Below, piece after piece: positions 23,841-45,646 of a DNA stretch of 64,000 nt; within the stretch, counting starts at the first letter, position 1; each line of letters begins with the position of its first letter. The notes under the pieces are model-generated. The model searched no databases and was not told where the DNA came from. It saw nothing but the letters and a program-made list of their open reading frames with translations. Position numbers and translations under genes: made by a program. Source of the DNA: Lepidodermella squamata. Lineage: Eukaryota; Animalia; Gastrotricha. The stretch lies in NCBI GenBank assembly GCA_047495785.1, contig JBLDXI010000054.1, forward strand, positions 2,666,001 to 2,730,000, in the 5' to 3' direction.

Positions 23841-23978
23841 AGCCCCTCGTGGGGCTCCAGAAAGTGCTACAGTGGACCCGTAGGTCCTCAGAGCGGGTAA
23901 TTGGGGTAGTTTTCAATTAGCAATTTCCACCTCTCGGTTTGCACCTCACTGAGTATGGAACTGCCACTGCGCAAAGCT
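23841..23978 (-). ncRNA. U4: U4 spliceosomal snRNA, copy 1
   Basis: Starts AGCTTTGCGCAGTGGCAGT (U4/U6 stem II). Has a K-turn 5' stem-loop, TTGCTAATTGAAAACT (stem I), an Sm-site position and a terminal hairpin; 138 nt. Confidence 0.93.
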
Positions 23979-24096
23979 AAGGATTGTCTAACATCGAAGC
24001 AGGAGCCGATCTCTAAAGAAGGGAACAACAGCCAGTGTAATAATTTGAATACGCAGTGAGGTAACAAAATATCAAAAAAGAAGTCAGAAAAAATGA

Positions 24097-24168
24097 AGGT
24101 CCCATCGAGATTTGAACTCGAGTCGCAGGATTCAGAGTCCTGAGTGCTAACCGCTACACCATGGGACC
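24097..24168 (-). tRNA. tRNA-Gln(CUG)
   Basis: Acceptor stem GGTCCCA/TGGGACC, anticodon arm CAGGA-CTCTGAA-TCCTG, T arm TCGAG-TTCAAAT-CTCGA, followed by a T-run. Confidence 0.97.
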
Positions 24169-24501
24169 TTGATGAAATAAGGGATAAAACTTTCAACTTT
24201 CAACCTGTTTGGACTTCCCTGAGTATTGGAAACTGCTTCAACGTGAAAATTAAAGATTGCTTGAAATAAATCTGCCCATCATTTTACGAGGCTCTCAACT
24301 GTGGGTGGGTGACTTTGTTGGTTTTGCTTTTGCCGTGTCTTCGATTCCTCAAAATGGTTCGGACGGTAGGACGCGTGACGCGGGGAAGAGAAATACAACT
24401 TTCAATTTCAATTTCAATATGACGATAAATACATATTTCATAAGCAAAACACCTCATAACGAAATCCAAAAGTCTCAACTTTTATCAATCGATTTTGATA
24501 A

Positions 24502-25443
24502 CTATTCTTTAGCGTTAGCATCATGCGCCTCAATTATGACAAATTTTTCCAGGACTTGGACAAACTCTTGGAGCAGATGGTCTTCGTCGATTGTATCCAC
24601 TTTAATACCTTCACCAGAAGACAGAGCGGTAAGCAAAGACACCTACGAATACAAGAAATGATGACGGAGATGATGAAAATAAGTAATCAATACGACGAGA
24701 CTCACATTTTCAGCAATTTTCCTTCCTTCCTTAGCTAAATCTTTCAAATCGGTAAGCGGCAAATGTTCAGCCAAGTATTTTTCATCCGCTCTGGTCGACA
24801 TTTCGACAAATGAGATCCACTTCCGAACTTCTTTGTATTTCAAATTTTCAAGGCCTGCTAGCATTTCCTCTTCCTTAGAGTCCAATTCTTCTACCATACG
24901 GGCTCTGAAACCTGCGATCTCATGGTTTACCTTGTCCTGAATGCTATCGATAGCAGTAAGTAACTTGTCGCGAGCAATTGTGGCATTCTCCTTTATCGCG
25001 AGACTAGCTGGAAGATTCCCGTGATACTCGTCACCAGCTAAAAAACCAATGTCGAACAGAACTTTGAATCTTTCGAAGTAACATTCGATCTGCGAGACTA
25101 ACTCCGTTCTTTTTGCTGGTAAACATGTTTCACATAGGTTAGATCCACCATTGCTAGACAGACTCGTACAACCTCGACTCTCGCATTGCAATTCGCCTGC
25201 CCACGTCACTCTTCTTTGATTCAGCGGCTTTCTGCTCGATAGCGACGGCTTGATTTTGGCATCGCAAATCGGGCATTTCGGAGGCGCCTGAGTAGTCGAG
25301 GGGCGCTGCCCTTCGTAGCCGATAAGGCAGCTGAAGCATATGACATGTTTGCAGTCGAGAACTTTCGGAAATCGGAAGACCTTTTTGCACAAGTCACACG
25401 CGACATCTTGTGGGGAATCGGAATTGTTCACTCCTGATGCCAT
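24502..25443 (-). CDS. RING-HC (C3HC4) finger protein, TRIM-like (degenerate B-box, coiled coil)
   Basis: CDLC...PKVLDCKHVICFSC...CPIC, then a Cys cluster and a helical heptad region. One intron ~24643-24704; stop at 24502. Confidence 0.8.
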
Positions 25444-26307
25444 TTTTATTGGAAACGAAGAAAGTGAGAGTGAGAATAAATTAGTAAATTGGAACCTCTT
25501 ATATTAGAAAAGAAGGCGTCTGGTTGAGTAATCAAGCGTTTTATTGCTAAGCCACTCGGTGGCTGATTAAGTCCACCTATAAATCTTGATGAATAACTCC
25601 ATCAAGGGCTTTCCATCATAAGTTCCAATCATTCCTTTCTTTATGACACGGAAAGGATTCGGCATTAATTTTCTTCGCGGGCAAATAATTGTCTGCAAAC
25701 TCATCATCGCTGCTGCAATTCACTCTGGAGAGAAGAATATGGCAATCATTTTTGCTTTCATTTAGCGTCATAGATTGAGTTCATGCAAAACTGAGGTGTG
25801 CAGCCTACACAGTCTTATCAGCGTCGCATCTATCAGATAGGAGCCGTGACTGTAATTCGGGTCAATGTGTTCCTCGAAGCTTCAACGATAGGCCAAAACT
25901 TCTGCGAGAGATTCTACGGAGTAGCTTACAAATAGAAAGCCAATCAATCCCACCAGTTTGACAGGTTACATGTGTTTAAGTTAAAATTGTATTGACAATA
26001 CACAAGTGCGCAGATTGGCGGAAATCCGCCGTTAAAAATGCCTAAAATAGGTTTTCGCAACAGAGTACTAAAGAGTTTAGAGTTTAGACTCTGAGTGCCT
26101 TTTCCTAAGCCTGTTTTGTCCCATATCTCAGGTCACATAAAACATCAATCTTGACATTCGCTTGAATCAATATAATATGTCAAGTTTGAAACAAAAAGTT
26201 CCGCGTATGATATTTAAAAATAAAAAGTGACACGTCTTGTTTAGTCTGATGATCTCATCAAAATTACTTACAAAGCGATATAAATAAATTGAAGAAATAA
26301 ATGGAAA

Positions 26308-28596
26308 TCAGTCCTGTTGCTCTGCAGCCAAGTGACCTGATCCCACTGAAGGATTATGGAACATTACTCTTTTAGTTTTGTAGCAATTAATGGACGAAAT
26401 GGTCACTGAGTGAAGCAGAGCAAAAATTGATAGAACCATCTGCCTATCGACTGGCGAATAAGTCACTAACATTATGAGGAATCCTCCGATGAAAAGCGAG
26501 GCTAAATTAGCCACGGAAAATCGTGTTAGTTTTACATCCAGCCACCCGTTAGGGATTACCAGCTTTTTGGAGAAAACTCTCAATGAAAAGGCGTAATAGC
26601 TTCCGAGGGCTAAAAGGTTAAGATAGATGAATGAGAGTGAAAGCAGCCACGGCGAACTATCTTGAGCGTGGCAAACAGTGACTTGGATGAAAGTTGCTAC
26701 ATCACTAGCTGAATCATAAATCACCCCGTCCCCAGGATACAGCTGATCCAACTGAATAGCAGGAGTCCAGATTGAGATGCAAATGAGTGGAACTGTCAGT
26801 GAGAAACCAAGCGAAATCAATGCTCCGTTAGTAAACCATTTTCCAAGGGCTGCGCTGGGTACCTTAATTTTAAGAGCTGATCTACGCTTTTTCCGGCACA
26901 AGCGTTCCAAATAAACTAATTTGGAGTTTGTCATGCCTGCTGTGACAACCAGAGCGATCGGAACAAGGATATGCTGAGCTGTACAAGCTGCTTCGCTATC
27001 TGTTGCCATCGAAGTAACAACAGCAGTAGCGTTAAATGCCATGCAAGTAAGGGTAAATGCTGCTTTTTCCCACTCGAAGGATCCACATCGAATGGAAATA
27101 CCGTAACCAAAAGCTATGATCTGCAGAAGTGTTGTTAAAATCGCAATCGTTGCTACAGACCAGAAAAATTCCTTGGTAATCCCAATCGATAAATTTAAAC
27201 TTCTGCGCTCATCCAAAGGTGGCTTCCCATCTGGAGTAAACCATGTTGCCGTGCCGAGAATTTCTGTGTAGTAGCTAGAAAAATTATTCAGTGGCGCGTT
27301 TACTTTGCGCCGAACTTTGATGATAGTTGTCAAATTATCTGGCGGTGTCCATTGAACGACTACCTGAGGGTCATCATCCATTTCGCCCCGTGATGAATAC
27401 TTGTTAAGATCTGTCCTAAGACCATAAAATTCTAAATTCGCCATTGTCTGATTAGTAATTCTCCCAATCAACCTTGAGTGAGTTCGGTATGACGAGAAAG
27501 ATAAGTTTTGCTTCAAAAGTGACTTCTCAGATCTGTCAAGGGCTAAAATTGCTTGTAGAGTTGCATCGAAACATGCAACACGTTTGTCGTAATCTGCAGG
27601 TCTTGTGTTATTCGTGTATTTAACCATCATCCGTTCGAAGTCACGCAAGTTTATCCCGAGTGAGGACGGCCTTGTATAGTTGTCAAAGATTGAAGCCGAT
27701 GAAGACCAAAAGGTTATTTTAAGCTGTTCCTGCAGTTGCTTCTTCGTACAATCTCCCCATACCACCTCAGGCAAACCTACCGAGTCGATGTAAGACCCCA
27801 AATAGATGAAAAACGCGTATCTAGCGCCGGCCAGACCATGTTTATAGGCCAGACAGAGAAACTGGGTTATAAGCAATGAATTAGCTGCTTCCAACACAAT
27901 GATTCTGGAGTCACTCTGCTTCAAATTGTCGATCAGTTGGTCACTAATCTCAGGTACAACGTCCAGAAAATTGACCTCAAAACCGTTTTTAATAGCTTCA
28001 TTCAATAGAGCTGTTCCGATCAATACGTCGAAAAAATTGTTAGCGTTGATAACAATCGCCATTCGTTTCCAGCCACCGATAATTTGCATGAATTTCACCT
28101 GTGGGAAGGAGACTAGCTCGACGGGTAGCCGAATTCTGTACAGATTCGGGAATAATTTCCGATTGGCTGTGAAAATCGGCGCGCCACAAGCTGTACCAAT
28201 GCCTACCAAGTCGAGCTCATGCAAAATTGATGCTATCGCCTTGCAACCTACGCTGTAATAAGGACCGATGACGACAGGAGCTGGAACAATTTTCTCATCA
28301 GGGTTGTTCTCAAACATGCGGCGAAAAGCAATAGCTTCTTTATGCGATTGCATCGAGTTGAATCCTTCGTCTCGATAAAGAGGTTTGAGGACATATCCGG
28401 GCAGAATGTCAGGCCTAGAATTCGCCAATTCAATGGCGATATCTGTTGCAGCTTTGCATGCTATACCGACTTTAGGCTCTTCGCCGGTGAATGGCATTAG
28501 AATGAGCATCGATAAAGTTTTGGTATCGGTTAAGATCTCCCATGAATCAATGAAATAGAAAGTAATTAGGTACGTTAAGCCAGTTAAACGAGTCAT
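26308..28596 (-). CDS. Class C GPCR-like receptor (GABA-B-like), intronless
   Basis: CKAATDIAIELANSRPDILPGYVL, VVIGPYYSVGC, FPNLYRI, LKQSDSRII, WFTPDGKPPLD; 7TM region. Confidence 0.88.
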   Translation of the reverse strand: MTRLTGLTYLITFYFIDSWEILTDTKTLSMLILMPFTGEEPKVGIACKAATDIAIELANSRPDILPGYVLKPLYRDEGFNSMQSHKEAIAFRRMFENNPDEKIVPAPVVIGPYYSVGCKAIASILHELDLVGIGTACGAPIFTANRKLFPNLYRIRLPVELVSFPQVKFMQIIGGWKRMAIVINANNFFDVLIGTALLNEAIKNGFEVNFLDVVPEISDQLIDNLKQSDSRIIVLEAANSLLITQFLCLAYKHGLAGARYAFFIYLGSYIDSVGLPEVVWGDCTKKQLQEQLKITFWSSSASIFDNYTRPSSLGINLRDFERMMVKYTNNTRPADYDKRVACFDATLQAILALDRSEKSLLKQNLSFSSYRTHSRLIGRITNQTMANLEFYGLRTDLNKYSSRGEMDDDPQVVVQWTPPDNLTTIIKVRRKVNAPLNNFSSYYTEILGTATWFTPDGKPPLDERRSLNLSIGITKEFFWSVATIAILTTLLQIIAFGYGISIRCGSFEWEKAAFTLTCMAFNATAVVTSMATDSEAACTAQHILVPIALVVTAGMTNSKLVYLERLCRKKRRSALKIKVPSAALGKWFTNGALISLGFSLTVPLICISIWTPAIQLDQLYPGDGVIYDSASDVATFIQVTVCHAQDSSPWLLSLSFIYLNLLALGSYYAFSLRVFSKKLVIPNGWLDVKLTRFSVANLASLFIGGFLIMLVTYSPVDRQMVLSIFALLHSVTISSINCYKTKRVMFHNPSVGSGHLAAEQQD

Positions 28597-29040
28597 TTTC
28601 GACAAGTTTGGAAAAAGTACTCGCTTAATGATTTTTTTAGACTCGCCATTGCTCTTCTTTAAAAAAGAGTCCCTTGAAGAAATGCATTAACGTCTAGTTT
28701 TACACTTCAGGAAGTAAGCGGGCAAATTTTAATTCGAGGAATATGTAGAATCCTGCCAAAAAGCAACTGTCGTTCGCCAAATAAGTGCTTCCGCTCGAAT
28801 CTACATTCAAAGTTGAGAAGGAATTGCTCCCCACCGATGACTGAGACTAAGCAATAAAAAACCCACCTTAACTTGGTTTTATACTTTACATCTGCTCTCC
28901 AAACACGCGCCGCCAGCTGTTAATCTTCAAATTATATAATCATAACTTATGCATGCTTGCACCTTGATGACTTGAAATAACTACTGCAAAAAACCGTGAA
29001 CGACAAAAAATAAGCAGTCATTATTAGTTTGAAGCTACCC

Positions 29041-30881
29041 ATGAGTAAAACTCGACAAAGTTACATTGATAGGAAATCATGGCAAGAAAATTACTTGCTC
29101 GAGCTCACTATCAGCTGTCGAGAGCTGAAAAACATGGACATTTTGTCGAAGACGGATGCTTTCGTCATTGTTTACCTTGAACAGCTGGGCGAAACATCAG
29201 AAAGGTGGAAAGAACTCGGTAGGACCGAGGTTGTCTGGAACAATCTTAACCCAGAGTTTTCTCGGAAGATTCATCTGAGCTACATTCCCGGAGAACGGCA
29301 ACGCCTTCAGTTCTGTGTCTATGACGTTGATGAATGGAAGCCATTTCAGTCCAGAACGCCGAAACCCAAGGACAAAGACTTGGTTGGAAAAATCGAAGTA
29401 ATGCTGAGCCGCCTTATCGAATTCAACGCCTATCAGGAGTATGAAGAAAATCTCTTTGTTGAAGGTGAGGCGAAACCACGAGGGACTGTCATCATTTCGG
29501 CAGAATGCATTCAAAATAGAACAGAGTCATTTTCAATGGTACAGTTCGGATGCGAAAAACTACCTGCTCCTAAATTCTCTCTCAGCATGGAGACTGAGGA
29601 ATATTTTTTCGAAATTCGGAAAGAGATGAATGGGAAGCAATTGTTGGTCTACCGCAGCGAGAATATCACAAATGTAAATGCTGACGCCTTGAAGCCATGG
29701 AAACCGTTTGAAATCACACGCTATTCGCTCTGCTCATGTGATGACTCGAAAATCATTCAATTATCGCTATGGAAATATTCGGAAGACGGCAAAAACAAAA
29801 TGATAGGCTCCAAAGAGACAACTGTGAGCCGCTTATTGAAAGGAGAGGAGGAGAATGTCTATGAGATGTCCATTCACGGAACTACTATTCGGCTGATAAG
29901 TCTTGAAAAGGATGCCCATCAAACTTTTCATGACTTGTTGCTCTACCGAGGAACGTTTCTTCATTACTTTGTTGCTATCGACTTTTCAATGTCCAACGGG
30001 AACCTGGTATCGCCTGATTCGTTGCACTATCTTGACAACACAGACATTCAAGCTACCAACCCATATCTGGATGCACTTAGAGCAGTTATGGATGTTGTTG
30101 AGGTTCAGAAAGAATCGGATAGCCTCGGCATTCCTGTTTTTGGCCTTGGGGCTGAGATAGCACCTAGTTGGAAAATGCCGGATTACTTTGCGCTGGTATG
30201 ACCATTATCTGCCATTTTTCTCTAGTGATCAGAGAAGCCATTTCATTTGCGTAGAATGGGAATCCAGAGAATCCTATCTGTTATGGGGTTCAGGAAGTCA
30301 TTTCGGCCTACAGAAGTGCGGTAAAAGAGCGCATTAGACCACATGAGCCAACTCATATAGCGCCTATCCTCAACTCTATTACCAAGTTATTTTCACCGCT
30401 TGTTTTTCTTCCCGATTTGTTTTTTGCATTTTAGCTTGGCTCGGTTCCATGACGATGATGGACATTATTTTGTCCTAATAATTTTTACCGACGGGCAAAT
30501 CACTGATATGTCGAATACAGTCAACGCGATAGTAGAAGCCAGTTCTTATCCGATATCAATAATTTTCATCGGGATTGGGCCGGGCCCTTTTCCTAAACTG
30601 GTAAAACTTGACGCTGATAACCGAAAGTTGGTCGATACCACAGGAAAAGCAATGCAGCGTGATATCGTTCAATTTGTTGACTTTGGCCACATCAACGCTT
30701 CGAGTTCCGGAAAGTTGGGCATGTCTCAAGTGATGTTGGCGAGGTATGTCAGAAAAAACAGCCAGAATATCGGCATTTAACACAATTTTGCAGAGAGCTG
30801 TTTTATGAGGCAACTCCTCAGTTCCTGGAAGCTCGAAGACCATCAAAAGACGAACATGAAAACGCCAATTTATCATTTTAA
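29041..30881 (+). CDS. Copine (C2-C2-vWA)
   Basis: ELTISCRELKNMDILSKTDAF, GRTEVVWNNLNPEF, VAIDFSMSNG...SLHY, LIIFTDGQITD, RDIVQFV; three short introns. Confidence 0.93.
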
Positions 30882-31310
30882 CATGTTTAAGAAATTGTTT
30901 GCCAAAGTGTTGTAACTTCCTGCAAATTCAGATGAAAATACGCATCAGCGCCTGTGAGATATTATTATGTCTGTTCTGCTTTAAGTCAAAGAATTAAAAT
31001 GTCGCTCTAATTGTTCAAGAAACACTCTGGAACATGTCACAGCTCACAGCTAATTACCTAGTAAAAAATAATCGAAACTTTGACTTCACTATAAACTACT
31101 AAGTGGGCTCGAAAATGGCATTAAATTCCGGTTTAATTCGCAAAAAACATGAACGTGAGTAATCATTGAATCACAAAATACTTTACAGTAAGATAATTTT
31201 CAGCTCGTTTCATTTCACCAAAATAGACAGATAAATCGAAAAAATGAAGATAAATCACATAATTCAGCAGGATTGTTTTCCGACTTGCCACGCTCCGCCG
31301 CACTCCAAGC

Positions 31311-34300
31311 TTAGTTATTAGCAAAGCAGCTGCCAGGGGTCCCAAATGGCCCCACAGGGCTCTGAAAACACAATAAAATCAAAATTGCTACATAGATAGA
31401 GAAGGTCATCGGTTTCTCACCTCATCATCATGACATTTATCACGTCGACAGTCGACAAAGGTAGATGAGCCTTTCTTGAAGCATTGATAATACTTCTGCA
31501 AAATATCTAAACTTAAACGAGCAACTTGTGTTCAAGTTCAAGCGTACCATGCCATCGACGTGTTGACAGTCGAGCCAATTGCGAGCGAAATAGCGGAACC
31601 CGTTGAATGGCCCAGTTACGGTGCTCTATCTCGAAAACTGAGAGCATTCTGCTTTGCAATGCATCAAACTACTCACCTCAGTTTCGCCGGGCTTGTCGCA
31701 CTTCATGTCATTCGCAACACAACGGAATGTTTTTCCTGTGTAGCACCGCTTCGCAACCTAAATTGGGTTACGAATAAGCATTCAATTAAATCAGAAAAGG
31801 TCACTTGTCCCACCCGGACATCCGAAATCTCAAGGAACAATACAAAAGTTTGATTCTTTACCTATGACTGACCTAGACCCCTAGGCAATGCAAGAAAGCC
31901 AGGAAGCAGGAGGTATATTAGCGTATCGCACCAGTTCCAGAAAAGAAAACCTTAAAGCTACAACCGCTGATTTGAATTACCCGAAACATAAAAAACTCCC
32001 AATCTCGAGGATTCTCGTTCGCACACTACTGCCCTGAAATCTATAGGGCCGAGCTACAAATTTATTCTAGCCAGAGCTTGATTTGAGATAGCAAAGCCGG
32101 AGGCGATAGAACATTCTAATCTCCGCTTGAAACTTACGCCTTGGTTGCATGTTTTCACATCAGCTTTCCCGGTGAGAGTGGTCTCGCCCGCTTGGCACGT
32201 AGTCTGGCGACAGCTAACGAATTCGTTAGTCTGAGTGTTGATGCAGCGAACAAAGCGAACTGCTGGCTTAGTTTCATTTGTCACCGCTGCAGCTGCCCGT
32301 GAAACACATCTTATTTTTCAAGAAATGCGGAAAACTATGTGTCAGAGCTTACTCATGGAGCAGTTTGACAGCGTAGTCGAATTTCCAACAAAACAAGAGA
32401 GACCAGGTCCTGAGTTGGGATTGCGACATGCATTCTGCGACGCGTTGAGGCTGCCGCCTGGGAGGTCCAGATCAGCGTAAACAGATTGCTCTGTCCACGG
32501 GCTGCACGTTTCATTCGAGTTGGTTTTTGTCACGGCGGTGCCTTCGTAGTCGTAACCGGTTGAGGTGAGGATGATCTCCTTGGACAGGTTAGAAGCTTTC
32601 ACGCCCTTGCAAGTTGCGTACACTACAAGTTTGAATCCCTGATCCGGTGACTGTTGCCCGACAATCGCCTGCATGTGCACCATAGCTTGAGATTTGTCTG
32701 TGACAAAAGGTCGACCGCTACTGATGCCACAGGAGCAAAATCTGTAGAACGAATGACCTGATACAACTTTGTTGAACAATGTTTACCAGATCCTCCACAA
32801 CTCATGCATTTTAACAGTCTCATAAATGTTATCACTTTGGATGAAAATTGAATTTGAATAAACTCACTTTAATCCAGGATAGCCACCCGCACCAAGATCG
32901 CGAATAAGGACGAAGTCGTCGCAAACGTTAAACCCTGTTGAAGAGAAAAGAATTAGGCAGGGCCGATATATTAGCATTGCGCTTACTTTCTGAGCATTGC
33001 ATGTTGGGTCTTTTCTCAAATACGAACACTAAACCGCTGTCAGCTTCCTGTGAAAAGATAAATAGGTCATATGAACTGCCGCAGAAATCGTGAAGACTAC
33101 ATACCTATGCTCAAGTTTCATTCAATTCAATATAAATTAGAAATTAATGTAGGTATTAGATTTTCAAGAATGGAGTCATCTCCTACATCTCCTACATTAG
33201 AACCTACATTTTAAAGCAACGTTTTATATAACTTCTCGAAATAGTTTTTCAAATAGCCTGGCTGTGCAAATATCTATGCAAATCTGAATGCGAATTCAAG
33301 TTGTTAAGAAAAAGTATAACACACTGTTGAAACGAGCCACGAACAGCTGCTACCAGCGGTGTATGTAGCTGGAGATTCGATAATGGTTTTGTTGCAAGGC
33401 GAGACTGTAACACGGCCACCACAGCTGCCAGGCGGTACAGCCGGCGCGAAGGTTTCGCACAGCGGACCTCCAAATCCGAACGGACACTGGCATAAGGTAC
33501 AGTTTTTAGCAGGATTAGGGAAGCCATCGTTCTCGCATTTTGTGGCGTTGCAAATCGGATCGACTGGAAAAAAAACAAAAAAAACCATGACAATTATTGT
33601 CCCATGTCTCGAGTAATCGAATGGCACTTGACAAGTAACAAACTAAGTCATGGGTCTGGCCCATTCGGAAATCAGTAGACCTACAACTGAAAGCCTGATC
33701 GCATCAAGACCAATCCGCTACATTCTGCCATGACAAATCACAATATTCTGAGTCAGCTATGTATTAGCTCACTCAAGACGCAAGAGAAGCAAGAGCTCGA
33801 AGTTAGCAGACAGATCTATAGGCACGAGCTATACAGGGCCACCCAAAATAAGCCGAGTAGGTCAAGCCTGGGTCTATTTTTTTCCGCCTGGGGAATCTAT
33901 GAAATTTGGCATTTTTCGAATGATGAATTGATTTCGAAAATGTGTACCGATCAAAATATGGGGGTTCCAGATCTAAAGCAGCGTCAAAGCGATCGTCTGG
34001 ACCCGATGATTAACTTAGCATCAAAAAGTCGTTCAATTTCACAGATCCAGGTGTGGACCGCCTCAAAGGTCAAAGGTCGAAAGTGGATGTTGACTTCTCG
34101 GTCACCTGTCGACCACTTCTAAAAATGCTACCCGGGCAAATTTCAAAAAATCAAAAAATCAAAAAATCGGCCGTCTCTCAGCTTAGCGATGACCCGAAGG
34201 GGAATCATATCGACTTTTTGCAAAACCCCCAGGAGCCAGTGTGTTAAATTGATTAATGATTGCTTCAAACAAATTGTGGACGTGAAACTAACAATGGGCC

Positions 34301-36232: not shown

Positions 36233-36244
36233 GAGAGCCTCGTG

Positions 36245-36317
36245 ATGGCTGTGTCCAAATACACTGGTTGATCATCACGAGCTGGGTTACTCAACCAGTG
36301 TATTTGGACACAGCCAT
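36245..36317. repeat. Perfect 27-bp inverted repeat with a 19-nt loop (mini-MITE or hairpin)
   Basis: ATGGCTGTGTCCAAATACACTGGTTGA ... TCAACCAGTGTATTTGGACACAGCCAT. Confidence 0.85.
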
Positions 36318-37735: not shown

Positions 37736-37807
37736 GGTCCCATGGTGTAGCGGTTAGCACTCAGGACTCTGAATCCTGCGACTCGAGTTCAAATCTCGAT
37801 GGGACCT
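37736..37807 (+). tRNA. tRNA-Gln(CUG)
   Basis: Same 72-nt cloverleaf sequence as the other four copies. Confidence 0.97.
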
Positions 37808-37920
37808 TCATTTTTTCAACCTCCTTTTGCTATTTTTCAACGCAAGCGTATTCAAATTATTTCCCTTTTTGCGACTCTCTGCATCGGAGAACGGCTTCAA
37901 ATCGAGTTTAGTTGATATTT

Positions 37921-38058
37921 AGCTTTGCGCAGTGGCAGTTCCATACTCAGTGAGGTGCAAACCGAGAGGTGGAAATTGCTAATTGAAAACTACCCCAATT
38001 ACCCGCTCTGAGGACCTACGGGTCCGCTGCAGCACTTTCTGGAGCCCCACAAGGGGCT
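37921..38058 (+). ncRNA. U4: U4 spliceosomal snRNA, copy 2
   Basis: Same U4 hallmarks as copy 1. Confidence 0.93.
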
Positions 38059-38431
38059 TTTGAATATCAGAAACAAATGTCAACTAACCATGCACTCAAT
38101 GTTGTCTTTAGCGTAAACTCGCACTGAAATAGTCATTTTTAAATAAACATGCAAATTCAAATTTACGAAAAATGTGTCCTACTTTTTTACCGCCACCTCA
38201 ATTCGTGGTTGTGGTAAATAATAACATTGCGTAGGAGCCAACAACTTTTTCTTGTGCGTCATTGTAGTCAACATGATGCGCATCTCACATCACCTCGCCC
38301 AATTAAAACGCCACGCAAAAACATTACGTTAATGTTTACCAAACCGAATGTTGTACTAGTGCATAGTAGAACCCAGCCCTGATGCTAGTTCGATTGGCGC
38401 TCAAGTGCGTCAATTTTTGTTTAGTCAAAGA

Positions 38432-41400
38432 ATGGGATTTTTTCTGAAATGCGCGTTCATTCTCAGCTTGGCATCAATTTCAACAGCAGTTAGGCCTCGA
38501 GCGAAGAATGTTAGGAAGGAACCGTCAATGTTTTATAGCTTCATCCGCGTTCCTCAAGTCGCTGCTAATACGGAGAATGGTCCTATAAAAAGGATTTTTA
38601 AATCAGCTCAGACAACTCGGGAGCCAACTTCACTGGAAAACTTGGTGAAAAATGCCTATGAAAAACTGCCGGAAATAGACATGCTTAAATTATGGCTGCA
38701 ATCTCAACCGAACGCAGCGTATCGCCGCAATACCTACGACTACTACCAATCCTCTGGAATGATCTATCAACCTGTAGATTATGGCGGTTTTATGATCGGA
38801 ATCGACGAGGAAGGACTCGCCGAACATTTGAGTAGCAGTGATGGCCCTCTGACTTTGAGTCGCTTGCTTAAAAACGCAATGGGCAATAAGGAATTCGAGC
38901 CCTCGCCACAACAGCAGGATTTCGGTAGGGAAATGGATGAGCTGATAACGGTCTTAAGTGGGTTACTTAAAGGAGGGGACGAAGATACATTAAAAAAAGT
39001 TATAGAAATAATGTACCCTCGAAAAGATTCAAACGGATCGGCAAAACCTTCGATTATCCCGCAAAATATGGAGCAAATCGTCGAAGACTTGGCTGTTCTA
39101 CTTAGGGATGATAGCTCTCCAAAGGCTAAGGAGCTTTACGAACTGCTTTCCCGTTTATACCCTGGCTCTGTTAAGCAAATAGCCATACCTGGAATTGATT
39201 ATGACACGCCTTCCTCTACAAATCGCCCCCCACACAATTTGCAGCAAGCGGTTAAGACTATGTTGGATAACATTAGGATCATAGTTCAGTTTGTGGATGA
39301 CACAACGCCAAAGCCGAAACCGACAAAGGCGAGTTCAGTAACAACTCCGATTACAGAGGCAACCACCCCTACTCCTCCGACAACATTGATTGGGCCTGTT
39401 TCTAGCTCGACTACTCAAACTACTCCGACATCTACAACTATTGAAATAACTACAACTACGACAGCCACGACTCCGACTACGCCGACCACAACTGTTTTAA
39501 CGTCGACAACTCAGACTACTCCTACACCTCCCACCACAGAAGTTGAGCTGGTTACAACTACGACTTCGACGACTACGACAACGTCGACTGAGGCGGCTAC
39601 TAGCCCTATCCCTACCCCTCCTACCACCAGGATTGAACTGACTACAACTACGACTACACCAACTGAACCTGTTACCACCTCAACAACTCAAACTACCCCT
39701 ATTCCTCCAACTACCAAAATCGAGCTGACTACGACCACTTCTACAATGGCTGCGACTATGCCTACTGAGCCGGCTACTAGCTCAACCCCTACCCCTCCTA
39801 CAACAAGGATCGAGGTGACTACAACTACGACTACGGCGGCTATGACTACGCCAACTGAGCCTACTACTGTCTCAACTACTCAAACTACTCCTATCCCTCC
39901 AACCACAAAAATCGAGCTGACTACGACTACGACTACTGCAGCTACTACTTCGACAACTCAAGCCACCCCTACCCCCCCTACCACTGTAATAGAGGTGATT
40001 ACAACTACGACACCTACGACTACTACGACTACCACAACCACTACGATTCCGGCCACAACCACTACCGGGCCTGTTCTAACCTCAACTACTCAATCTACTC
40101 CTACCCCTCCTACTACAGTAATCGAACAGGCCACGACTGCAACTACGACAGCTCTGACTACGACTACAGGGGCTGCTAGTAGTATCACTACTACCCCCGC
40201 TGATGTTATCACCTCAGCAAGTTCCATTTCAACCAATGCAACTACGATCCAGTCAACAACGGCACCTGTTGTTACTACAACGGCTGATTCAGCCACCACG
40301 ACCGGGGCGGCTACGACGACGAAATCGTTCACTACTATGATCTCATCCACAGAAGTTCCAACCACTATTGCCATCGTTACCACGGGTACTCCTCCAAATG
40401 CGACCAACTCCACAGAGACAACTATTGCCATTGTAAGTGAAACAACAACAGCGCCGGTTACTACCCCTCCAACAACAACAATAGTTGTAGAAAGTACAAC
40501 AACCCCAGTCACCGTAGCCGCTAATATAACTACAACAGAGGCGGCCAGGACAACATCGACTACGGCTTTACCCATCTCAACAACCGCCAATTTAACGACC
40601 ATAGCAAGTACTGTTGTGACTACGACAGCTCCCACGACTACATCGATGCGAAATATTGGTAACAGGACCAATATTTTGGAAGTACCCGGTTGCTTTGCCT
40701 CGGATAAGGGTGGTTTTGAAGTTAAATGTTCTCGAAATTCCACGGTTGATTTCAGCCGTGTTTATGTGAGTCTCTATCATAAATGTTCCAGCCAAGATAA
40801 TCTATCTCTGATTTATAGCTTCCGATTGGTGCATTTATGTTCACCTGTGATGAGTGTACAGTAGTTCCGGGAAAGCTGGACCAGTCATTCTGTGAATTCG
40901 TCGATACCGCAGCTTATGGACTCTATTCTGCAGTGTTCAACAACGTGAGTTTATCCGAAATCAGTACGAACGCTCTCGGTTGTCTGCAACGTCCAACTGG
41001 TGAAAATTCGTCGGATGCTTTTGTCAAAAAGTTAACTCGCTTAGTCATCAAAGGGACGCCGAACAATAACCTAACTCTGGCACCTAGGATGTGTGGACCT
41101 TACGCGGAGATCAATACAGTCTATTTATTGGAGATCAGATACTTGCAGATGAATTACGAATCGTTCAGAAACTGTTCATTTCGTTGGTTAACTATAGAGA
41201 GGGCAGATTTTACAGCATCAGGCTTCTCTCCGGAATATCTGCTAAGCATGGCGAAGGTGCCTGTTCATTTAAAGCTGCTCCGCGTTAGAATGGATACGGT
41301 CGAGCGAACGTGGGAGAATGTTTATCGGCGATCTGCTATGGACAACGGATGTGTGGCTGATTTCGACCTGGGTGGTGGCGGGACGGTCTCCTTGAACTGC

Positions 41401-41592
41401 GACTATCGGGCAGCCTGGGTGAAAGAGCGGGATGAAATGGAGAGGAAGTTGAAAATCGGCGATGCCTTGTGCAGATGGCCGCCGCAGTACTCGACTAGAA
41501 ATCTTGCTGGCATTCGATGGGAATTTATAGCCGCTATCTCGACTCAAGTACCTACAACAACGGAAAATCATCACCCAGACTATATCTATTAG
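38432..41592 (+). CDS. Secreted mucin-like protein: helical N-domain, Thr/Pro-rich repeats, C-terminal LRR/LRRCT-like domain
   Basis: Signal peptide MGFFLKCAFILSLASISTA; imperfect TTQTTPTPPTTxIELTTTT repeats; in-frame intron 40766-40818; LNCDYRAAW...ALCRWPP resembles an LRR C-terminal cap. Confidence 0.8.
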
Positions 41593-41722
41593 TTTTTAAA
41601 TGATTGATTTATCGTATTTTGCCCCGTTTGATGAAGCTGGCATGGCCAATGATTTCTGGAATAAATACACTTAATTTGTTAGAACGGCTTTTTGATGAAG
41701 TCCTTAGCATTCATTTCATCAC

Positions 41723-41794
41723 GGTCCCATGGTGTAGCGGTTAGCACTCAGGACTCTGAATCCTGCGACTCGAGTTCAAATCTCGATGGGACCT
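41723..41794 (+). tRNA. tRNA-Gln(CUG)
   Basis: Identical cloverleaf. Confidence 0.97.
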
Positions 41795-41911
41795 TCATTT
41801 TTTCTGACTTCTTTTTTGATATTTTTTACCTCGCCGCATATTCAAATTATTGCACTGGTTGTTGTTCCCTTCTTTATAGAACGGCTCCTGCTTCGATGTT
41901 AGACAATCCTT

Positions 41912-42049
41912 AGCTTTGCGCAGTGGCAGTTCCATACTCAGTGAGGTGCAAACCGAGAGGTGGAAATTGCTAATTGAAAACTACCCCAATTACCCGCTCT
42001 GAGGACCCACGGGTCCGCTGTAGCACTTTCTGGAGCCTCACGAGAGGCT
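41912..42049 (+). ncRNA. U4: U4 spliceosomal snRNA, copy 3
   Basis: U4 hallmarks. Terminal hairpin AGCCTC/GAGGCT versus AGCCCC/GGGGCT in the other copies is a compensatory change. Confidence 0.93.
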
Positions 42050-42422
42050 TTTGAACATCAGAAATAAACTTATCCAGCAGCTATTCTAAGATTGACCTTA
42101 TTTCAAGCCGACTAATTAATTCACATGTATTAACAAATTATGGTCTTGGCGCGAACCTTTGGCATTATTTTCAAAGCCTTATGATACAGCAAATTCATCG
42201 TGTAGCATGTGAATAATTGAAAGACAGAAGATGTAGAACACGAGTTATATCATGTTACTTGCTGAACGTCTGTGATTGTCGGTGAGTTACTGTTTCTACG
42301 CCTATCTATGCGTGCTTGATATCATGTTACGACCTCCAATTAGCTGGGGGAACGCCCACGTCTGAGCTTCTCCTTAAGAAACAGCCTTCCTTTATGTTTC
42401 TTCAGCAAACAGTGATTTAGAA

Positions 42423-44702
42423 ATGCAGAGGATCGTTTGCTTGTTTCTTGCCCAGATCATTACCATCGCCTGGTCAAAACCTTACAATCTTACAATTTTG
42501 CAATTGACTGTGGTGCAAAATGTACCGATCAATCAACTGGCTTGCTCTATTGCGGCTCAGTTCGTGGCGGACGAAATCAACCGCAGATCTGATATCTTGC
42601 CCGACTATCACCTCCTCGTTCGTGCGGTAGACGACGGCCCAGGTGGGGTTTTCGACACCAAACTAGCTGTTACTTTTTCTCGTGAAATGGATGAACATTT
42701 TTACAATCCAAGTGGTGTAGTTTCGACCTTCCAGTCACCTATCATAATCGGTGGCACTTTTACCACGGGTTGTAAGTCTTACGGAGCAATGATTCACCAC
42801 ATTCACAGTGTTGCAATAGCTTATGCGTGTTTAAGTCCTATTTTTACAGAGAATCGCAGAACATATCCTAATTTGTATCGCACGAAAGGCCCGGCTGAAA
42901 TCAGCAACTTCGTAACTCTCGCATTTCTACAACGCATGGGCTGGACAAAGATAGCAATGTATGCAAACGTGGAAAATTTATTCAACGCTATGATGGCCAC
43001 GCATTTGTACTCTATGGTTGATACATTCGGGGTTAGCCTTGTTTGGTTTGATATCGGGCCGCAAATTGCCCTCTCAACGGTCGAATCGATGAAGCAGAGT
43101 GATGCGAGAATATTCATTATCCATGCAGCGGAACTTCCAGTTATACTTAACTTTCTCTGCTTTGCTTATGTATCAGGTATTCGAGGCAATCGATACGTTT
43201 TCATGTTTTTCACTTCCGCAACAGCTGATCCTCTGGCTTTGCCGGATTTGATAAGTCCTGGTTGTTTCAGGTCGATGATCATTGCTCAATTTCGGCAAAC
43301 GTTTCTATTTGGTCCGCCTCTGACACCTATGGAGAATTACCCAAATACTTCACTATTAAACATGAGCCGGGCAGCTTTTGAATCAAAGTTTCTTTCTTAT
43401 CGGCAATCAACAACGAATGCAACGACAGATTTCTTTGAACAATATTCATGCCATGATATGATGCTTATGGCTGTTTTAGCTTTGGACAAGTCCGAAAAGC
43501 AACTGTCGACCATTGGAAAATCCCTGCGCGATTTCAAAATCGAGCCTGAAATGGTTATGAAGATCGTCAATCGAAGTGTTGCGGATACCGATTTCATTGG
43601 CCTGAGGGCCGGGCGATTGAAGTACTCGAGGCGATTAGAATTCGATGATGAACCGTTATTCATTCAATCATGGGACCCGAATCGTGGATTTCAGGCGCGC
43701 TACAAATGGTTTAACGTCTCAGGCACACAATTTAACCTCAAAGAGCTGCAACGTATCGATTGGGCTACGGGTGACGCAGGGCCCCCACGAGACTCAGCAT
43801 CGCTTTCGATAGTCGAAATATGCCTCAGCCCACTTGCTTCGATGGCTCTGATTGTTTGGGCGTCATTAATTGCATTAGCTAATTTAGCAACATTTTTCAG
43901 CCCGAAACTGAACGATGAAAAGACACGTTTCCGTGGAGGCGTTGATTACAGAATAATTTTAATAGGTTGCGTGCTGCTTGACTCCGCGGCGATATGTTAT
44001 GCTCTAACCGGGGATCTTTGCAACGTCAGACTGATTCTCGTCATTCTAGGAATTTCAGCGTTAGATGGGACGATATTCTTTAAGCTTGCTTTTTTGGCTC
44101 TGGGCGTAAACAAATCTAGGTATGTCTCATCGAGAGCAGGCCGCTCCGATGTCTTTGAAATGTCTCCTCTTCCGAGATCGAGATCGAGAACGAGAACGAT
44201 CAGCAGAAACGATGGAACTTTTAACAATGAAAATAAACCAAATACCAAAACCGTAATGGCAGCAATCATCTGGATTGCACCGAATTTTGTGGCCGCCGTC
44301 GTCTACATAGCGTCGGACCCATCCCATATGATTATGGTGGAGCATAAACAGCAGTATTATGACCGAGCGCTGGATTCTGTCACCGTGTTCCTAGAACCGG
44401 TGTGTAAATCACAGGACACTTTTACCTTCGCAATTACAGCCATTCATTTATTTCTTCAATGCGCAGGATGTCTCTTTGCGTTCAAGCTTCGAGCTGTTGT
44501 GTTACATCGGAGAGATCGGGTTTTCAGCATTGCTATTGCAAATTTGGCGACAATCTCAATCGCTTCAATGTTTATCATCATTTTGGTGCAATCATCTATG
44601 ATAGCGGGCCAAGTAACGTTTTCTGTTGCTTGTTTGCTTATATCGACGTCAGTATCAACAATCATCTTTTACCCCCTATTCACCAAGTCGCCACAGCTTT
44701 GA
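42423..44702 (+). CDS. Class C GPCR-like receptor, close paralogue of 21140-23398 in inverted orientation
   Basis: Long identical peptide blocks with the 21-23 kb gene; signal peptide, VFT-like ectodomain, 7TM. Confidence 0.88.
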   Translation: MQRIVCLFLAQIITIAWSKPYNLTILQLTVVQNVPINQLACSIAAQFVADEINRRSDILPDYHLLVRAVDDGPGGVFDTKLAVTFSREMDEHFYNPSGVVSTFQSPIIIGGTFTTGCKSYGAMIHHIHSVAIAYACLSPIFTENRRTYPNLYRTKGPAEISNFVTLAFLQRMGWTKIAMYANVENLFNAMMATHLYSMVDTFGVSLVWFDIGPQIALSTVESMKQSDARIFIIHAAELPVILNFLCFAYVSGIRGNRYVFMFFTSATADPLALPDLISPGCFRSMIIAQFRQTFLFGPPLTPMENYPNTSLLNMSRAAFESKFLSYRQSTTNATTDFFEQYSCHDMMLMAVLALDKSEKQLSTIGKSLRDFKIEPEMVMKIVNRSVADTDFIGLRAGRLKYSRRLEFDDEPLFIQSWDPNRGFQARYKWFNVSGTQFNLKELQRIDWATGDAGPPRDSASLSIVEICLSPLASMALIVWASLIALANLATFFSPKLNDEKTRFRGGVDYRIILIGCVLLDSAAICYALTGDLCNVRLILVILGISALDGTIFFKLAFLALGVNKSRYVSSRAGRSDVFEMSPLPRSRSRTRTISRNDGTFNNENKPNTKTVMAAIIWIAPNFVAAVVYIASDPSHMIMVEHKQQYYDRALDSVTVFLEPVCKSQDTFTFAITAIHLFLQCAGCLFAFKLRAVVLHRRDRVFSIAIANLATISIASMFIIILVQSSMIAGQVTFSVACLLISTSVSTIIFYPLFTKSPQL

Positions 44703-45083
44703 CTAACTATTCGGTACTCGATGTGTCATACCTTTTTCATTCCTTTTTTAATGGCTTAAGAATAAGGATATTATTGCCCACTGAGATTGATATGTGCTTA
44801 CCTTCTAAATGTGTCCAGTTTGATTTTATCCGGAGTTTGATAAATAATAATAGTTAATAATAATTTCTGTTTCAAGGCGAGCTTTGAGGACTAGAAGGGC
44901 ATGCCACTTACTCTAGCCCTAGGTCTTATCGTAAGTGAGTGAGATTTCCGTACGATGGGATTTGACTGGTGCAGCTGACACTTCTAGTCTCCCAATTTTC
45001 TATTTTGTAACGCGATGGATTAATGGACAAATGGACAAATAAAGCGGGTCTGTTAGATAAAACCTAAGCACTCAATTCATCAA

Positions 45084-45155
45084 GGTCCCATGGTGTAGCG
45101 GTTAGCACTCAGGACTCTGAATCCTGCGACTCGAGTTCAAATCTCGATGGGACCT
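45084..45155 (+). tRNA. tRNA-Gln(CUG), followed by a cassette spacer but only the first 5 nt of U4
   Basis: Identical cloverleaf. The downstream spacer is homologous to the other cassettes and ends AGCTT at 45279-45283. Confidence 0.97.
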
Positions 45156-45316
45156 TCACTTTTTCATACTTCTTTTTAGATATTTTTACCTCACGGAGTA
45201 TTCAAAATTCAAAGTATTACACTGGCTGTTGATCCCTTTCGCATAGAAAGGCCAATGCTTCGAGGTCAGACTATCTTTAGCTTGAAAGTTGAAAGTCGTA
45301 TCCCTAATTTCATCAC

Positions 45317-45388
45317 GGTCCCATGGTGTAGCGGTTAGCACTCAGGACTCTGAATCCTGCGACTCGAGTTCAAATCTCGATGGGACCT
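45317..45388 (+). tRNA. tRNA-Gln(CUG)
   Basis: Identical cloverleaf. Confidence 0.97.
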
Positions 45389-45508
45389 TCATTTTTTGAC
45401 GATTTTTTTGTTACTTTTCAGGTTCAGAGCAAGTATATTCAAATTACGCTACTTTCTGCAAGTTCCTTCATAATAGAAAGGCTTCTCATTTGATTTTAGT
45501 TGATCTTT

Positions 45509-45646
45509 AGCTTTGCGCAGTGGCAGTTCCATACTCAGTGAGGTGCAAACCGAGAGGTGGAAATTGCTAATTGAAAACTACCCCAATTACCCGCTCTGAG
45601 GACCTCCGGGTCCGCTGTAGCACTTTCTGGAGCCCCACAAGGGGCT
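45509..45646 (+). ncRNA. U4: U4 spliceosomal snRNA, copy 4
   Basis: U4 hallmarks; ends 44 nt from the stop codon of the convergent Cys-loop gene. Confidence 0.93.

What the first reader, a model, noticed from the sequence alone, without database searches (positions are those of the whole stretch)
23841..45646. Repeated tRNA-Gln(CUG)/U4 snRNA cassette with near-fixed spacing
Seen: all four U4 genes lie 113-120 nt downstream of an identical tRNA-Gln(CUG) gene on the same strand (24097-24168/23841-23978 minus; 37736/37921; 41723/41912; 45317/45509). The RNA bodies are nearly invariant. The spacers diverge but keep their length and a TATTCAAATTA motif about 70 nt before U4. Known: animal U4 is normally a stand-alone Pol II gene driven by a PSE, whereas trypanosomatid snRNA genes depend on the A/B boxes of a neighbouring, usually divergent, tRNA gene. 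Inference: this may be an animal case of tRNA-coupled snRNA expression, with the tRNA acting as promoter/enhancer or as part of a dicistronic precursor. Three of four U4 copies end in TTTT, a possible Pol III terminator.
Basis: partly seen in the sequence, partly recalled or inferred. Interest (0 to 1): 0.88.

Follow-up and report, generated by a model that had tools for sequence, protein, structure and literature searches.

The report
tRNA-then-snRNA gene cassettes, genome-wide
In this small invertebrate genome, probably a rotifer's, most U4 and U1 spliceosomal RNA genes, and via tRNA remnants about half of the U2 genes, sit about 115 bases behind a same-strand tRNA gene while keeping their own ordinary promoter, which hints untested that tRNA-gene factors help switch on snRNA genes in an animal.

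Summary
Four U4 genes lie 113-120 nt downstream of identical, co-oriented tRNA-Gln(CUG) genes.

The pattern extends beyond this window:
- 9 of 14 U4 genes follow this private tRNA-Gln isodecoder.
- 25 of 30 U1 genes follow initiator tRNA-Met at 115-125 nt (one at 151 nt).
- 17 of 30 U2 genes follow a tRNA relic that keeps only the B-box half plus a T-run at the same distance.
- U5 and U6 are rarely linked (about 10%).

It starts at -75 in U1, U2 and U4 genes, linked or not. It comes with a non-TATA -30 element and a shared 3' box.

T6 terminators directly follow each tRNA. U2 carries internal T5 runs, and only 8 of 14 U4 genes end in TTTT. A dicistronic or Pol III reading is therefore not supported.

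Best reading (about 50%): two separate transcription units, in which the TFIIIC-bound tRNA or B-box acts as an upstream activating element for weak-PSE Pol II snRNA promoters. Main rival (about 33%): co-amplified hitch-hikers kept alike by gene conversion.

No expression data were available. First readers of this scan noted the same theme at other loci of this genome. I found no paper describing it.

The parts
24097..24168 (-). Cassette 1: tRNA-Gln(CUG), the U4-cassette isodecoder
   Evidence: 65 bits; 100% identical to the 9 other cassette copies
24066..24093 (-). Cassette 1: three T-runs (T6, T6, T4), Pol III terminator plus back-ups
24043..24053 (-). Cassette 1: PSE core CGTATTCAAAT at -75..-65
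24001..24014 (-). Cassette 1: -30 element AGAGATCGGCT (no TATA)
23843..23978 (-). Cassette 1: U4 snRNA gene
   Evidence: 102.6 bits
23814..23842 (-). Cassette 1: 3' flank with 3'-box-like CAGAAACAA
37736..37807 (+). Cassette 2: tRNA-Gln(CUG)
37811..37837 (+). Cassette 2: T-runs T6, T4, T5
37847..37857 (+). Cassette 2: PSE core CGTATTCAAAT at -74..-64
37885..37898 (+). Cassette 2: -30 element GGAGAACGGCT
37921..38056 (+). Cassette 2: U4 snRNA gene
   Evidence: 103.9 bits
38057..38085 (+). Cassette 2: 3' flank with CAGAAACAAA
41723..41794 (+). Cassette 3: tRNA-Gln(CUG)
41798..41827 (+). Cassette 3: T-runs T6, T6, T6
41837..41847 (+). Cassette 3: PSE core CATATTCAAAT at -75..-65
41876..41889 (+). 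Cassette 3: -30 element ATAGAACGGCT
41912..42047 (+). Cassette 3: U4 snRNA gene, with compensatory C127U/G134A in the 3' stem
42048..42076 (+). Cassette 3: 3' flank with CAGAAATAAA
45084..45155 (+).
45156..45283 (+). Orphan spacer. It has a cassette-type T-run, a PSE with a 7-nt ATTCAAA duplication, a -30 element and the first 5 nt of U4 (45279-45283). It is then fused to the leader of cassette 4, so its U4 was deleted
45317..45388 (+). Cassette 4: tRNA-Gln(CUG)
45392..45418 (+). Cassette 4: T-runs T6, T7, T4
45434..45444 (+). Cassette 4: PSE core TATATTCAAAT at -75..-65
45473..45486 (+). Cassette 4: -30 element ATAGAAAGGCT
45509..45644 (+). Cassette 4: U4 snRNA gene, followed by CTATG with no T4
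45645..45673 (+). Cassette 4: 3' flank with TTAACAAACAA

Best explanation
Each cassette holds two separate genes. The first is a Pol III tRNA gene that ends at its own strong, redundant terminator. The second, about 115 nt downstream, is a conventional SNAPc-type Pol II U4 gene. It has a PSE at -75..-65, a non-TATA -30 element and a 3' box. This part is shown by sequence. The inferred part is that the tRNA gene acts as the upstream activating or chromatin-opening element for the snRNA promoter. The key piece would be its B box, the TFIIIC binding site, about 135-145 nt before the snRNA start. It would play the role of a distal sequence element and make up for a degenerate PSE. The same design has been adopted for U1 (initiator tRNA-Met), for U4 (a private tRNA-Gln isodecoder) and for U2 (tRNA-Gly or B-box-only relics).
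For: 1) The linkage is genome-wide, class-specific and same-stranded. U4: 9 of 14. U1: 25 of 30 loci, and at least 28 of 40 identical initiator tRNA genes are followed by a U1 gene at 115-125 nt. U2: 1 intact tRNA-Gly at 112 nt plus 17 relics.
2) Three different tRNA species sit at the same distance, which argues for a spacing constraint rather than one inherited accident. The B-box core lies at -134..-150 in 46 of 74 genes, against a background of 0.5 per kb.
3) Where the tRNA is dead, the B-box half and T-run survive in place. U1 L045 has a clean deletion of tRNA nt 1-25 (the A box). L017 and about 10 U2 lineages keep a perfect GGTTCRANNCC with an unrecognisable 5' half. No converse case was seen.
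4) Unlinked genes carry near-perfect PSEs (0-1 mismatch). Linked ones average about 2 mismatches (MWU p about 0.001).
5) In a cassette pair duplicated together with a GPCR gene, 4-fold sites are 69% identical and the flanks are random. The spacer is 93%, U4 97% and the tRNA 100% identical. The conserved block has sharp edges at -205 and +160.
6) Evidence for Pol II: U2 shares the PSE, the -30 element and the 3' box and has internal T5 runs.
7) A contig from a differently labelled organism also joins the tRNA-Gln 3' end to U4 over a spacer of similar length but unlike sequence.
Against: No expression, ChIP or mutational data exist. Five U4 genes with the same mature sequence work from promoters without an adjacent tRNA, so the tRNA is dispensable given a good PSE. 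The link between PSE quality and linkage rests on gene families that are not phylogenetically independent. Gene conversion over a short block flanked by two identical genes could keep the spacer similar without selection. Relics that keep only the 3' half could partly reflect how truncations arise. U5 (5 of 48) and U6 (3 of 31) are rarely linked. The tRNA-to-PSE distance varies by about 10 nt, looser than expected for a rigid protein-protein contact.
Confidence: 0.5

Rival explanations
1. Hitch-hiking. An snRNA gene once landed next to a tRNA gene, and the pair was then amplified as a unit by segmental or tandem duplication. Gene conversion keeps the copies alike. The tRNA has no effect on snRNA transcription.
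For: The snRNA promoters are complete on their own, with PSE, -30 element and 3' box. Unlinked U4, U1 and U2 genes exist with identical mature RNAs. Cassettes 1 and 3 were demonstrably copied together with a neighbouring GPCR gene. Each snRNA class has one partner tRNA, as expected from one founder per class. The 10 cassette tRNA-Gln copies form a private, identical isodecoder lineage typical of concerted evolution.
Against: Three independent founders (iMet-U1, Gln-U4, Gly-U2) would all have to share the same orientation and a 112-125 nt gap by accident. B-box halves persist at the same place after the tRNA is destroyed, in several unrelated U2 and U1 lineages whose other upstream sequence is randomised. 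Linked genes have systematically weaker PSEs.
Confidence: 0.33
2. The tRNA gene is a boundary or insulator. The TFIIIC/TFIIIB complex and the stacked terminators shield the snRNA promoter from silencing or from read-through by neighbouring or host genes. The benefit might also run the other way, with the snRNA promoter's open chromatin helping the tRNA isodecoder.
For: Cassettes lie among unrelated protein genes and, according to unchecked first-reader notes, inside introns. Redundant T-runs stand between the two genes. tDNAs and ETC sites are established barriers in yeast and human (own knowledge). About 70% of the listed initiator tRNA genes are in U1 cassettes, so the tRNA side may also profit.
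Against: A barrier needs no fixed distance or orientation, yet both are kept. A roadblock inside a sense-oriented host intron would hurt the host gene. Nothing in the sequence tests this directly.
Confidence: 0.12
3. Trypanosomatid-like or plant-like mechanism. U4 is made by Pol III using the tRNA's A and B boxes, or is cut out of a tRNA-U4 dicistronic precursor.
For: tRNA proximity. 8 of 14 U4 genes are followed by TTTT, and U4 and U1 have no internal T4 run.
Against: T6 plus back-up T-runs stand directly after every tRNA. A PSE and a non-TATA -30 element sit at canonical positions and are shared with U2, which has two internal T5 runs. TTTT is absent after 6 of 14 U4 genes, including cassette 4. 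A shared 3'-box-like element follows U1, U2 and U4. The orientation is tandem, not divergent as in trypanosomatids (PMC4950102).
Confidence: 0.04

Closest known systems
Trypanosomatid snRNA genes with companion tRNA or tRNA-like genes (for example Leishmania major U2, PMC4950102)
   Same: A tRNA or tRNA-like element roughly 100 nt upstream of an snRNA gene. B-box-bearing tRNA-like relics are also used. The association is found across several snRNA classes.
   Different: There the tRNA is divergently oriented. All snRNAs are Pol III products, no PSE exists, and A/B-box dependence has been shown experimentally. Here the orientation is tandem. A canonical PSE, -30 element and 3' box are present. 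U2 cannot be a Pol III product, and dependence is untested.
Animal Pol II snRNA promoters (PSE bound by SNAPc, vertebrate DSE enhancer, Drosophila PSEA/PSEB, 3' box with Integrator)
   Same: A PSE at a fixed distance, a second non-TATA element near -30 (PSEB-like), a 3' box a few nt past the mature end, multicopy genes and concerted evolution.
   Different: Here the PSE core starts at -75 and reads CATATGCAAAT, which contains the octamer-like ATGCAAAT. The place of a distal enhancer is taken by a whole tRNA gene or a B-box relic. I found no paper reporting this for an animal.
tDNAs and extra-TFIIIC (ETC) B-box sites that influence neighbouring Pol II genes in yeast and human (own knowledge)
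   Same: B-box-only sites conserved next to Pol II promoters. tRNA genes act as nucleosome-free or boundary elements.
   Different: Those effects are usually repressive or insulating. They are not tied to one gene class or to a fixed 135-145 nt distance and orientation.
Plant dicistronic tRNA-snoRNA genes (own knowledge)
   Same: A tRNA immediately upstream of a small nuclear or nucleolar RNA gene on the same strand.
   Different: The plant units lack a terminator between the two genes and lack a promoter for the downstream RNA. Here both are present.
Linked multigene repeats of small RNA genes in invertebrates and fish, such as 5S rDNA with SL RNA or with U1, U2 or U5 (own knowledge; compare PMC3464664 listed)
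   Same: Co-amplified cassettes that mix Pol III and Pol II small-RNA genes and evolve in concert.
   Different: Those are tandem-array neighbours without a conserved promoter-scale spacing. Here the cassettes are dispersed among protein genes, and the tRNA sits at promoter distance in three snRNA classes.

Membership tests
SNAPc/PSE-type Pol II snRNA gene (animal U1/U2/U4/U5 class) | Proximal sequence element at a fixed distance upstream, shared by all snRNA classes | tested here: met
   The best match to CATATGCAAAT starts at -77..-74 in 69 of 73 U1, U2 and U4 genes, including all 14 U4 genes
SNAPc/PSE-type Pol II snRNA gene (animal U1/U2/U4/U5 class) | No TATA box at -30; a Pol II-specific second element instead | tested here: met
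   AGAACGGCT, AAAGCGG or AGAACGCGG at about -33..-25 in U4, U1 and U2; no TATA
SNAPc/PSE-type Pol II snRNA gene (animal U1/U2/U4/U5 class) | 3' box shortly downstream of the mature 3' end | tested here: met
   An RAAAACAAA-like element lies 8-20 nt past the end of U1, U2 and U4, linked or not. Its function as an Integrator signal is inferred.
SNAPc/PSE-type Pol II snRNA gene (animal U1/U2/U4/U5 class) | Transcription by Pol II, TMG cap | not testable with these tools
   No RNA or ChIP data for the organism. Indirect support: U2, with the same promoter type, has internal T5 runs.
Trypanosomatid-type tRNA-dependent Pol III snRNA gene | Divergently oriented companion tRNA | tested here: not met
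   All linked tRNAs are on the same strand as the snRNA gene
Trypanosomatid-type tRNA-dependent Pol III snRNA gene | Pol III product: T-run terminator at the 3' end, no internal T-runs, no PSE | tested here: not met
   TTTT follows only 8 of 14 U4 genes. U2 has two internal T5 runs. A PSE is present.
Trypanosomatid-type tRNA-dependent Pol III snRNA gene | snRNA expression depends on the tRNA's A and B boxes | not testable with these tools
   Needs mutational reporters. The only indirect evidence is retention of B boxes in relics.
Dicistronic tRNA-small RNA precursor | No terminator between the tRNA and the downstream RNA | tested here: not met
   A T6 run 4 nt after each tRNA, plus one or two further T-runs
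Dicistronic tRNA-small RNA precursor | Downstream RNA lacks its own promoter | tested here: not met
   A PSE and a -30 element lie in the spacer
ETC-like (B-box-only, TFIIIC) element next to a Pol II promoter | Consensus B box kept without a functional tRNA | tested here: met
   U2 L049, L050, L068-70, L073 and L074 have a perfect GGTTCRANNCC, yet no tRNA is found by ARAGORN even at relaxed settings, or by Rfam. U1 L045 lacks tRNA nt 1-25. This applies to the U2 and U1 relics, not to the window's intact tRNAs.
ETC-like (B-box-only, TFIIIC) element next to a Pol II promoter | TFIIIC occupancy and an effect on the neighbouring gene | not testable with these tools
   Needs ChIP and genetics

The most novel reading that the evidence does not exclude
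In this animal lineage a TFIIIC-bound tRNA gene, or a bare B box, at about -140 is a genuine and for weak-PSE copies required upstream promoter element of Pol II snRNA genes. That would be direct TFIIIC-to-SNAPc cross-talk. It would be the first animal counterpart of the trypanosomatid tRNA-assisted snRNA promoter, and it would tie the supply of initiator tRNA and a tRNA-Gln isodecoder to spliceosome production.
Probability: 0.35. Interest if true: 0.85.

Novelty: new variant of a known kind. Interest (0 to 1): 0.72.

Why it matters
Animal snRNA genes are the textbook case of stand-alone PSE promoters. tRNA-assisted snRNA transcription has been considered a kinetoplastid oddity. This genome places most U1 and U4 genes, and about half the sampled U2 genes via B-box relics, at promoter distance behind co-oriented tRNA genes. 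The snRNA genes still keep a normal Pol II promoter. The genome also contains unlinked, strong-PSE copies of the same genes. Together these form a natural experiment on whether Pol III factors (TFIIIC/TFIIIB) can act as enhancers for SNAPc/Pol II promoters. Even if the coupling is only evolutionary, the finding has practical value. About 70% of the listed initiator tRNA genes are embedded in U1 cassettes, and a private tRNA-Gln isodecoder is tied to U4. Annotators of snRNA and tRNA genes should expect such cassettes and B-box relics.

Tried and rejected
- Dicistronic or Pol III reading: rejected on terminators, PSE, -30 element, 3' box and the U2 internal T5 runs.
- Cassette tied to the neighbouring class-C GPCR genes: rejected. 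Only cassettes 1 and 3 share a GPCR paralog. Cassette 2 precedes an unrelated ORF, and the five cassettes beyond the window have no GPCR.
- SINE or retroposed unit: rejected. The promoter lies upstream of the U4 start and a terminator stands in the middle. I did not search systematically for poly(A) tails or target-site duplications.
- RNA evidence: none available. The source organism has no RNA run. 'Organism B' runs are small-RNA libraries that match only the tRNA body, and I did not use them further.
- Metagenome scans for the cassette, once specific and once generic: both blank. This is uninformative because that collection probably holds few micro-invertebrate contigs.
I redid it with the ACAGAGA region.
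- Nematode SL1 search: blank and uninformative by the tool's own control.
- Organism identification: a copine search gave only about 32% identity to vertebrate proteins, so the taxon was not established here. Other agents' notes say probably rotifer.
I did not try to get round that. Only coordinate-level pattern tests were done.
- Lineage collapsing for the PSE statistic worked poorly (66 'lineages' from 73 genes), so its p-value is only indicative.
The single read-laying run used 901 letters.
Full report
OBSERVATION.
ARAGORN and Rfam agree on the window's content. There are four U4 genes (RF00015, 102.6-104.2 bits against a cut-off of 46):
- 23843-23978(-)
- 37921-38056(+)
- 41912-42047(+)
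- 45509-45644(+)

There are five tRNA-Gln(CUG) genes:
- 24097-24168(-)
- 37736-37807(+)
- 41723-41794(+)
- 45084-45155(+)
- 45317-45388(+)

Four of the tRNAs lie 118, 113, 117 and 120 nt upstream of a U4 gene on the same strand. It carries a cassette-type spacer with a T-run, a PSE holding a 7-nt duplication, and a -30 element. That spacer runs into the first 5 nt of U4 (45279-45283) and is then fused to the leader of cassette 4. It is therefore a cassette whose U4 was deleted.

ANATOMY OF A CASSETTE.
Each tRNA is followed after 4 nt by T6, and then by one or two further T-runs within 30 nt. A second conserved block, AGAACGGCT, lies at about -33..-25, and there is no TATA box. An AGAAACAA-type element follows 8-15 nt after the U4 end.

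I aligned the nine tRNA-linked U4 cassettes of the genome. Pairwise identity is at noise level (about 0.3) in the flanks. It rises at -205, is 1.0 across the tRNA, 0.61-0.88 across the spacer and 0.92-1.0 across U4. It is back to noise by +160. The conserved unit is therefore about 370 nt long with sharp edges.

THE GENOME-WIDE PICTURE.
The window is C54:2666001-2730000 of a 121-Mb assembly in 151 contigs. The genome has 14 canonical U4 genes plus one weak U4-like hit.

U4. Nine genes have the tRNA-Gln ending 113-123 nt upstream: the four in the window and five others about 130-145 kb beyond the window's end. One has a tRNA-Gln about 400 nt upstream, and four have none within 1.5 kb. The exact tRNA sequence of the cassettes occurs only 10 times in the genome: the nine cassettes plus the orphan. 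The bulk tRNA-Gln genes, at least 25 of them in arrays, are 94% identical. They differ from the cassette form at five positions. These include a compensatory swap of pair 28:42 and two T-loop bases. The cassette tRNA is thus a private, intact isodecoder.

U1. Of 30 loci read, 25 have initiator tRNA-Met on the same strand. In 24 the gap is 115-125 nt and in one it is 151 nt. A tRNA-Leu(UAG) often lies just upstream. Seen from the tRNA side, at least 28 of 40 identical initiator tRNA genes are followed by a listed U1 gene at 115-125 nt.

U2. Only one locus has an intact tRNA, a tRNA-Gly(UCC) with a 112-nt gap. Seventeen others carry a T-arm or B-box-like hairpin, an acceptor-like tail and a T-run at the same place. 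Seven lineages have a perfect GGTTCRANNCC. Their 5' halves are unrecognisable to ARAGORN, even at relaxed settings, and to Rfam.

Across the three classes the B-box core lies at -134..-150 in 46 of 74 genes. The background rate is 0.5 per kb.

U5 and U6. A B-box at the cassette distance is found for 5 of 48 U5 genes and 3 of 31 U6 genes. Two of those U6 genes sit behind a 97%-identical tRNA-Gln variant.

WHAT THE MOTIF IS.
The best match to CATATGCAAAT starts at -77..-74 in 69 of 73 U1, U2 and U4 genes, whether or not they are tRNA-linked. It is the organism's ordinary PSE. Unlinked genes have it almost perfect, often as GTGTGCATATGCAAAT. Linked genes carry degenerate versions:
- U4: CATATACAAAT or CGTATTCAAAT
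- U1: AATAACCAAAT and others

Mean mismatches are 2.24 for linked lineages against 1.37 for unlinked ones (Mann-Whitney p about 0.001). The gene families are not independent, so this is a trend and not proof.

WHICH POLYMERASE.
U2 shares the PSE, the -30 element and the 3' box with U4 and U1. It also contains two internal T5 runs, which Pol III could not pass. TTTT follows only 8 of 14 U4 genes. The others read CTTGTG, CTTATG or CTATG. With terminators directly behind every tRNA, a dicistronic precursor or Pol III transcription of U4 is very unlikely.

ARE THE LINKED COPIES REAL GENES?
Yes. The cluster beyond the window carries the covarying A23G/U50C change. Cassette 3 carries C127U/G134A in the terminal stem. 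Both changes preserve base pairs.

AGE AND CONSTRAINT.
Cassettes 1 and 3 were duplicated, with an inversion, together with the class-C GPCR gene that starts about 250-375 nt downstream. For that pair:
- The GPCRs are 77% identical in protein.
- Their 4-fold degenerate sites are 69% identical.
- The 300 nt upstream of the tRNA and the U4-to-ATG intergenic DNA are at shuffled-sequence level.
- The spacer is 93%, U4 97% and the tRNA 100% identical.

The whole cassette, spacer included, is therefore held together either by selection or by gene conversion. These data cannot separate the two.

RELICS.
U1 locus L045 has a clean deletion of tRNA nucleotides 1-25, which removes the A box. It keeps the upstream leader, the B-box half, the T-run and the spacing. 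L017 keeps only GGATCGAAGC, the acceptor 3' strand and the T-run. Together with the U2 relics, this means the half nearest the snRNA gene survives tRNA death repeatedly. That half holds the TFIIIC-binding B box. I saw no converse case.

RELATIVES AND EXPRESSION.
No RNA run exists for the organism. Contigs from a differently labelled organism (run X20) join the tRNA-Gln 3' end and T-run to the U4 5' end. They skip about 90 nt of unlike spacer. Another contig shows two tRNA-Gln copies 132 nt apart, as at the orphan. This suggests, weakly, that the cassette exists in a relative. Two metagenome scans were blank.

The taxon was not established here. A copine gave only about 32% identity to named proteins. 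Other agents' notes on this genome say probably rotifer (unverified).

INTERPRETATION.
Shown by sequence: there are two separate transcription units, a Pol III tRNA gene with redundant terminators and a canonical PSE-type snRNA gene.

Inferred, at about 50%: the tRNA gene, and minimally its B box, acts as an upstream activating or chromatin-opening element for weak-PSE snRNA promoters. The arguments are:
- three different tRNAs converge on the same distance and orientation;
- the B box is retained in relics;
- PSE strength trends inversely with linkage.

The main rival, at about 33%, is co-amplification with gene conversion and no functional coupling. It is supported by the complete autonomous promoters, by unlinked copies that encode the same RNA, and by the demonstrated segmental duplication. 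A boundary or insulator role, or a benefit running from snRNA to tRNA, gets about 12%. A Pol III or dicistronic mechanism gets about 4%.

COMPARISON WITH WHAT IS KNOWN.
The closest described system is the trypanosomatid one. There, snRNA genes depend on the A and B boxes of an upstream, divergently oriented tRNA or tRNA-like gene, and all snRNAs are Pol III products (PMC4950102). The present cassettes fail the defining features of that family: orientation, Pol III signatures and absence of a PSE. They meet those of ordinary animal Pol II snRNA genes. The U2 and U1 relics resemble ETC-type B-box sites.

Six full-text searches found no description of co-oriented tRNA-to-snRNA cassettes in an animal. 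First readers of this scan noted the same theme at other loci of this genome. I verified several of those notes independently.

VERDICT.
The 'tRNA as promoter or enhancer' half remains open and is supported by indirect evidence. I class it as a new variant of a known kind, with interest 0.72.

Noticed in passing
window 45084-45316: An orphan tRNA-Gln plus a full cassette spacer. The spacer ends in AGCTT, the first 5 nt of U4, and is joined to the TGAAAGTTGAAAGT... leader that also precedes the tRNA of cassette 1. This is a deletion that removed one U4 from a former tandem pair. The orphan's PSE carries a 7-nt ATTCAAA duplication.
   Followed up: partly
window 7967-15909, 21140-23590(-), 26308-28605(-), 38405-44702: A cluster of long intronless ORFs of about 760-820 aa. 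Three of them (21140-23590, 26308-28605, 42423-44702) are class-C GPCRs with ANF_receptor and 7tm_3 domains. The pair 21140/42423 is 77% identical. ORFs 10777 and 13540 are 53% identical to each other and have no Pfam hit. ORFs 38405-40864 and 7967-10432 match nothing here.
   Followed up: partly
L015 (G000:C1:1551066-1551228): A weak U4-like hit (51 bits, 163 nt, starts AGCTTTGCGAAG) with no PSE, -30 element or tRNA upstream. It could be a divergent variant, a pseudogene or a co-opted fragment.
   Followed up: no
U2 loci L052-L056, L066, L067, L071 (upstream -130..-1): The tRNA-less U2 family has a perfect GTGTGCATATGCAAAT PSE. It also has a GGGYGGAGCTT motif near -115, TGCGCR-type motifs further upstream, and an A-run/T-run (AAAAAATTTTTT) at about -20. 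The upstream motifs may be a conventional distal element that stands where the tRNA stands in linked genes.
   Followed up: no
G000 genome-wide: At least 28 of 40 identical initiator tRNA-Met genes are embedded in U1 cassettes, often as tRNA-Leu(UAG) - iMet - U1. Most of the organism's listed initiator tRNA genes are therefore physically tied to U1 genes.
   Followed up: partly
G000:C3:3943012, C12:991947, C29:2487639: U6 of this organism begins GTCAATCTTCGGATTGGCATATAC..., an unusual 5' stem sequence. Only 3 of 31 U6 genes have a B box at -125..-156, and two of these sit behind a 97%-identical tRNA-Gln variant.
   Followed up: partly
G000:C25:47161-107259: About 20 identical U5 genes in a tandem array with periods of about 1.8, 2.4 and 3.4 kb. 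None has a B-box core at the cassette distance. A first-reader note describes this array as mixed with ten tRNA genes.
   Followed up: no
L048/L050/L075 (G000:C42:4722412-4730914): Pairs of divergently arranged U2 genes about 370 nt apart at their 5' ends. Each has a B-box-like relic, and tRNA-Ser(UGA) genes flank them.
   Followed up: no
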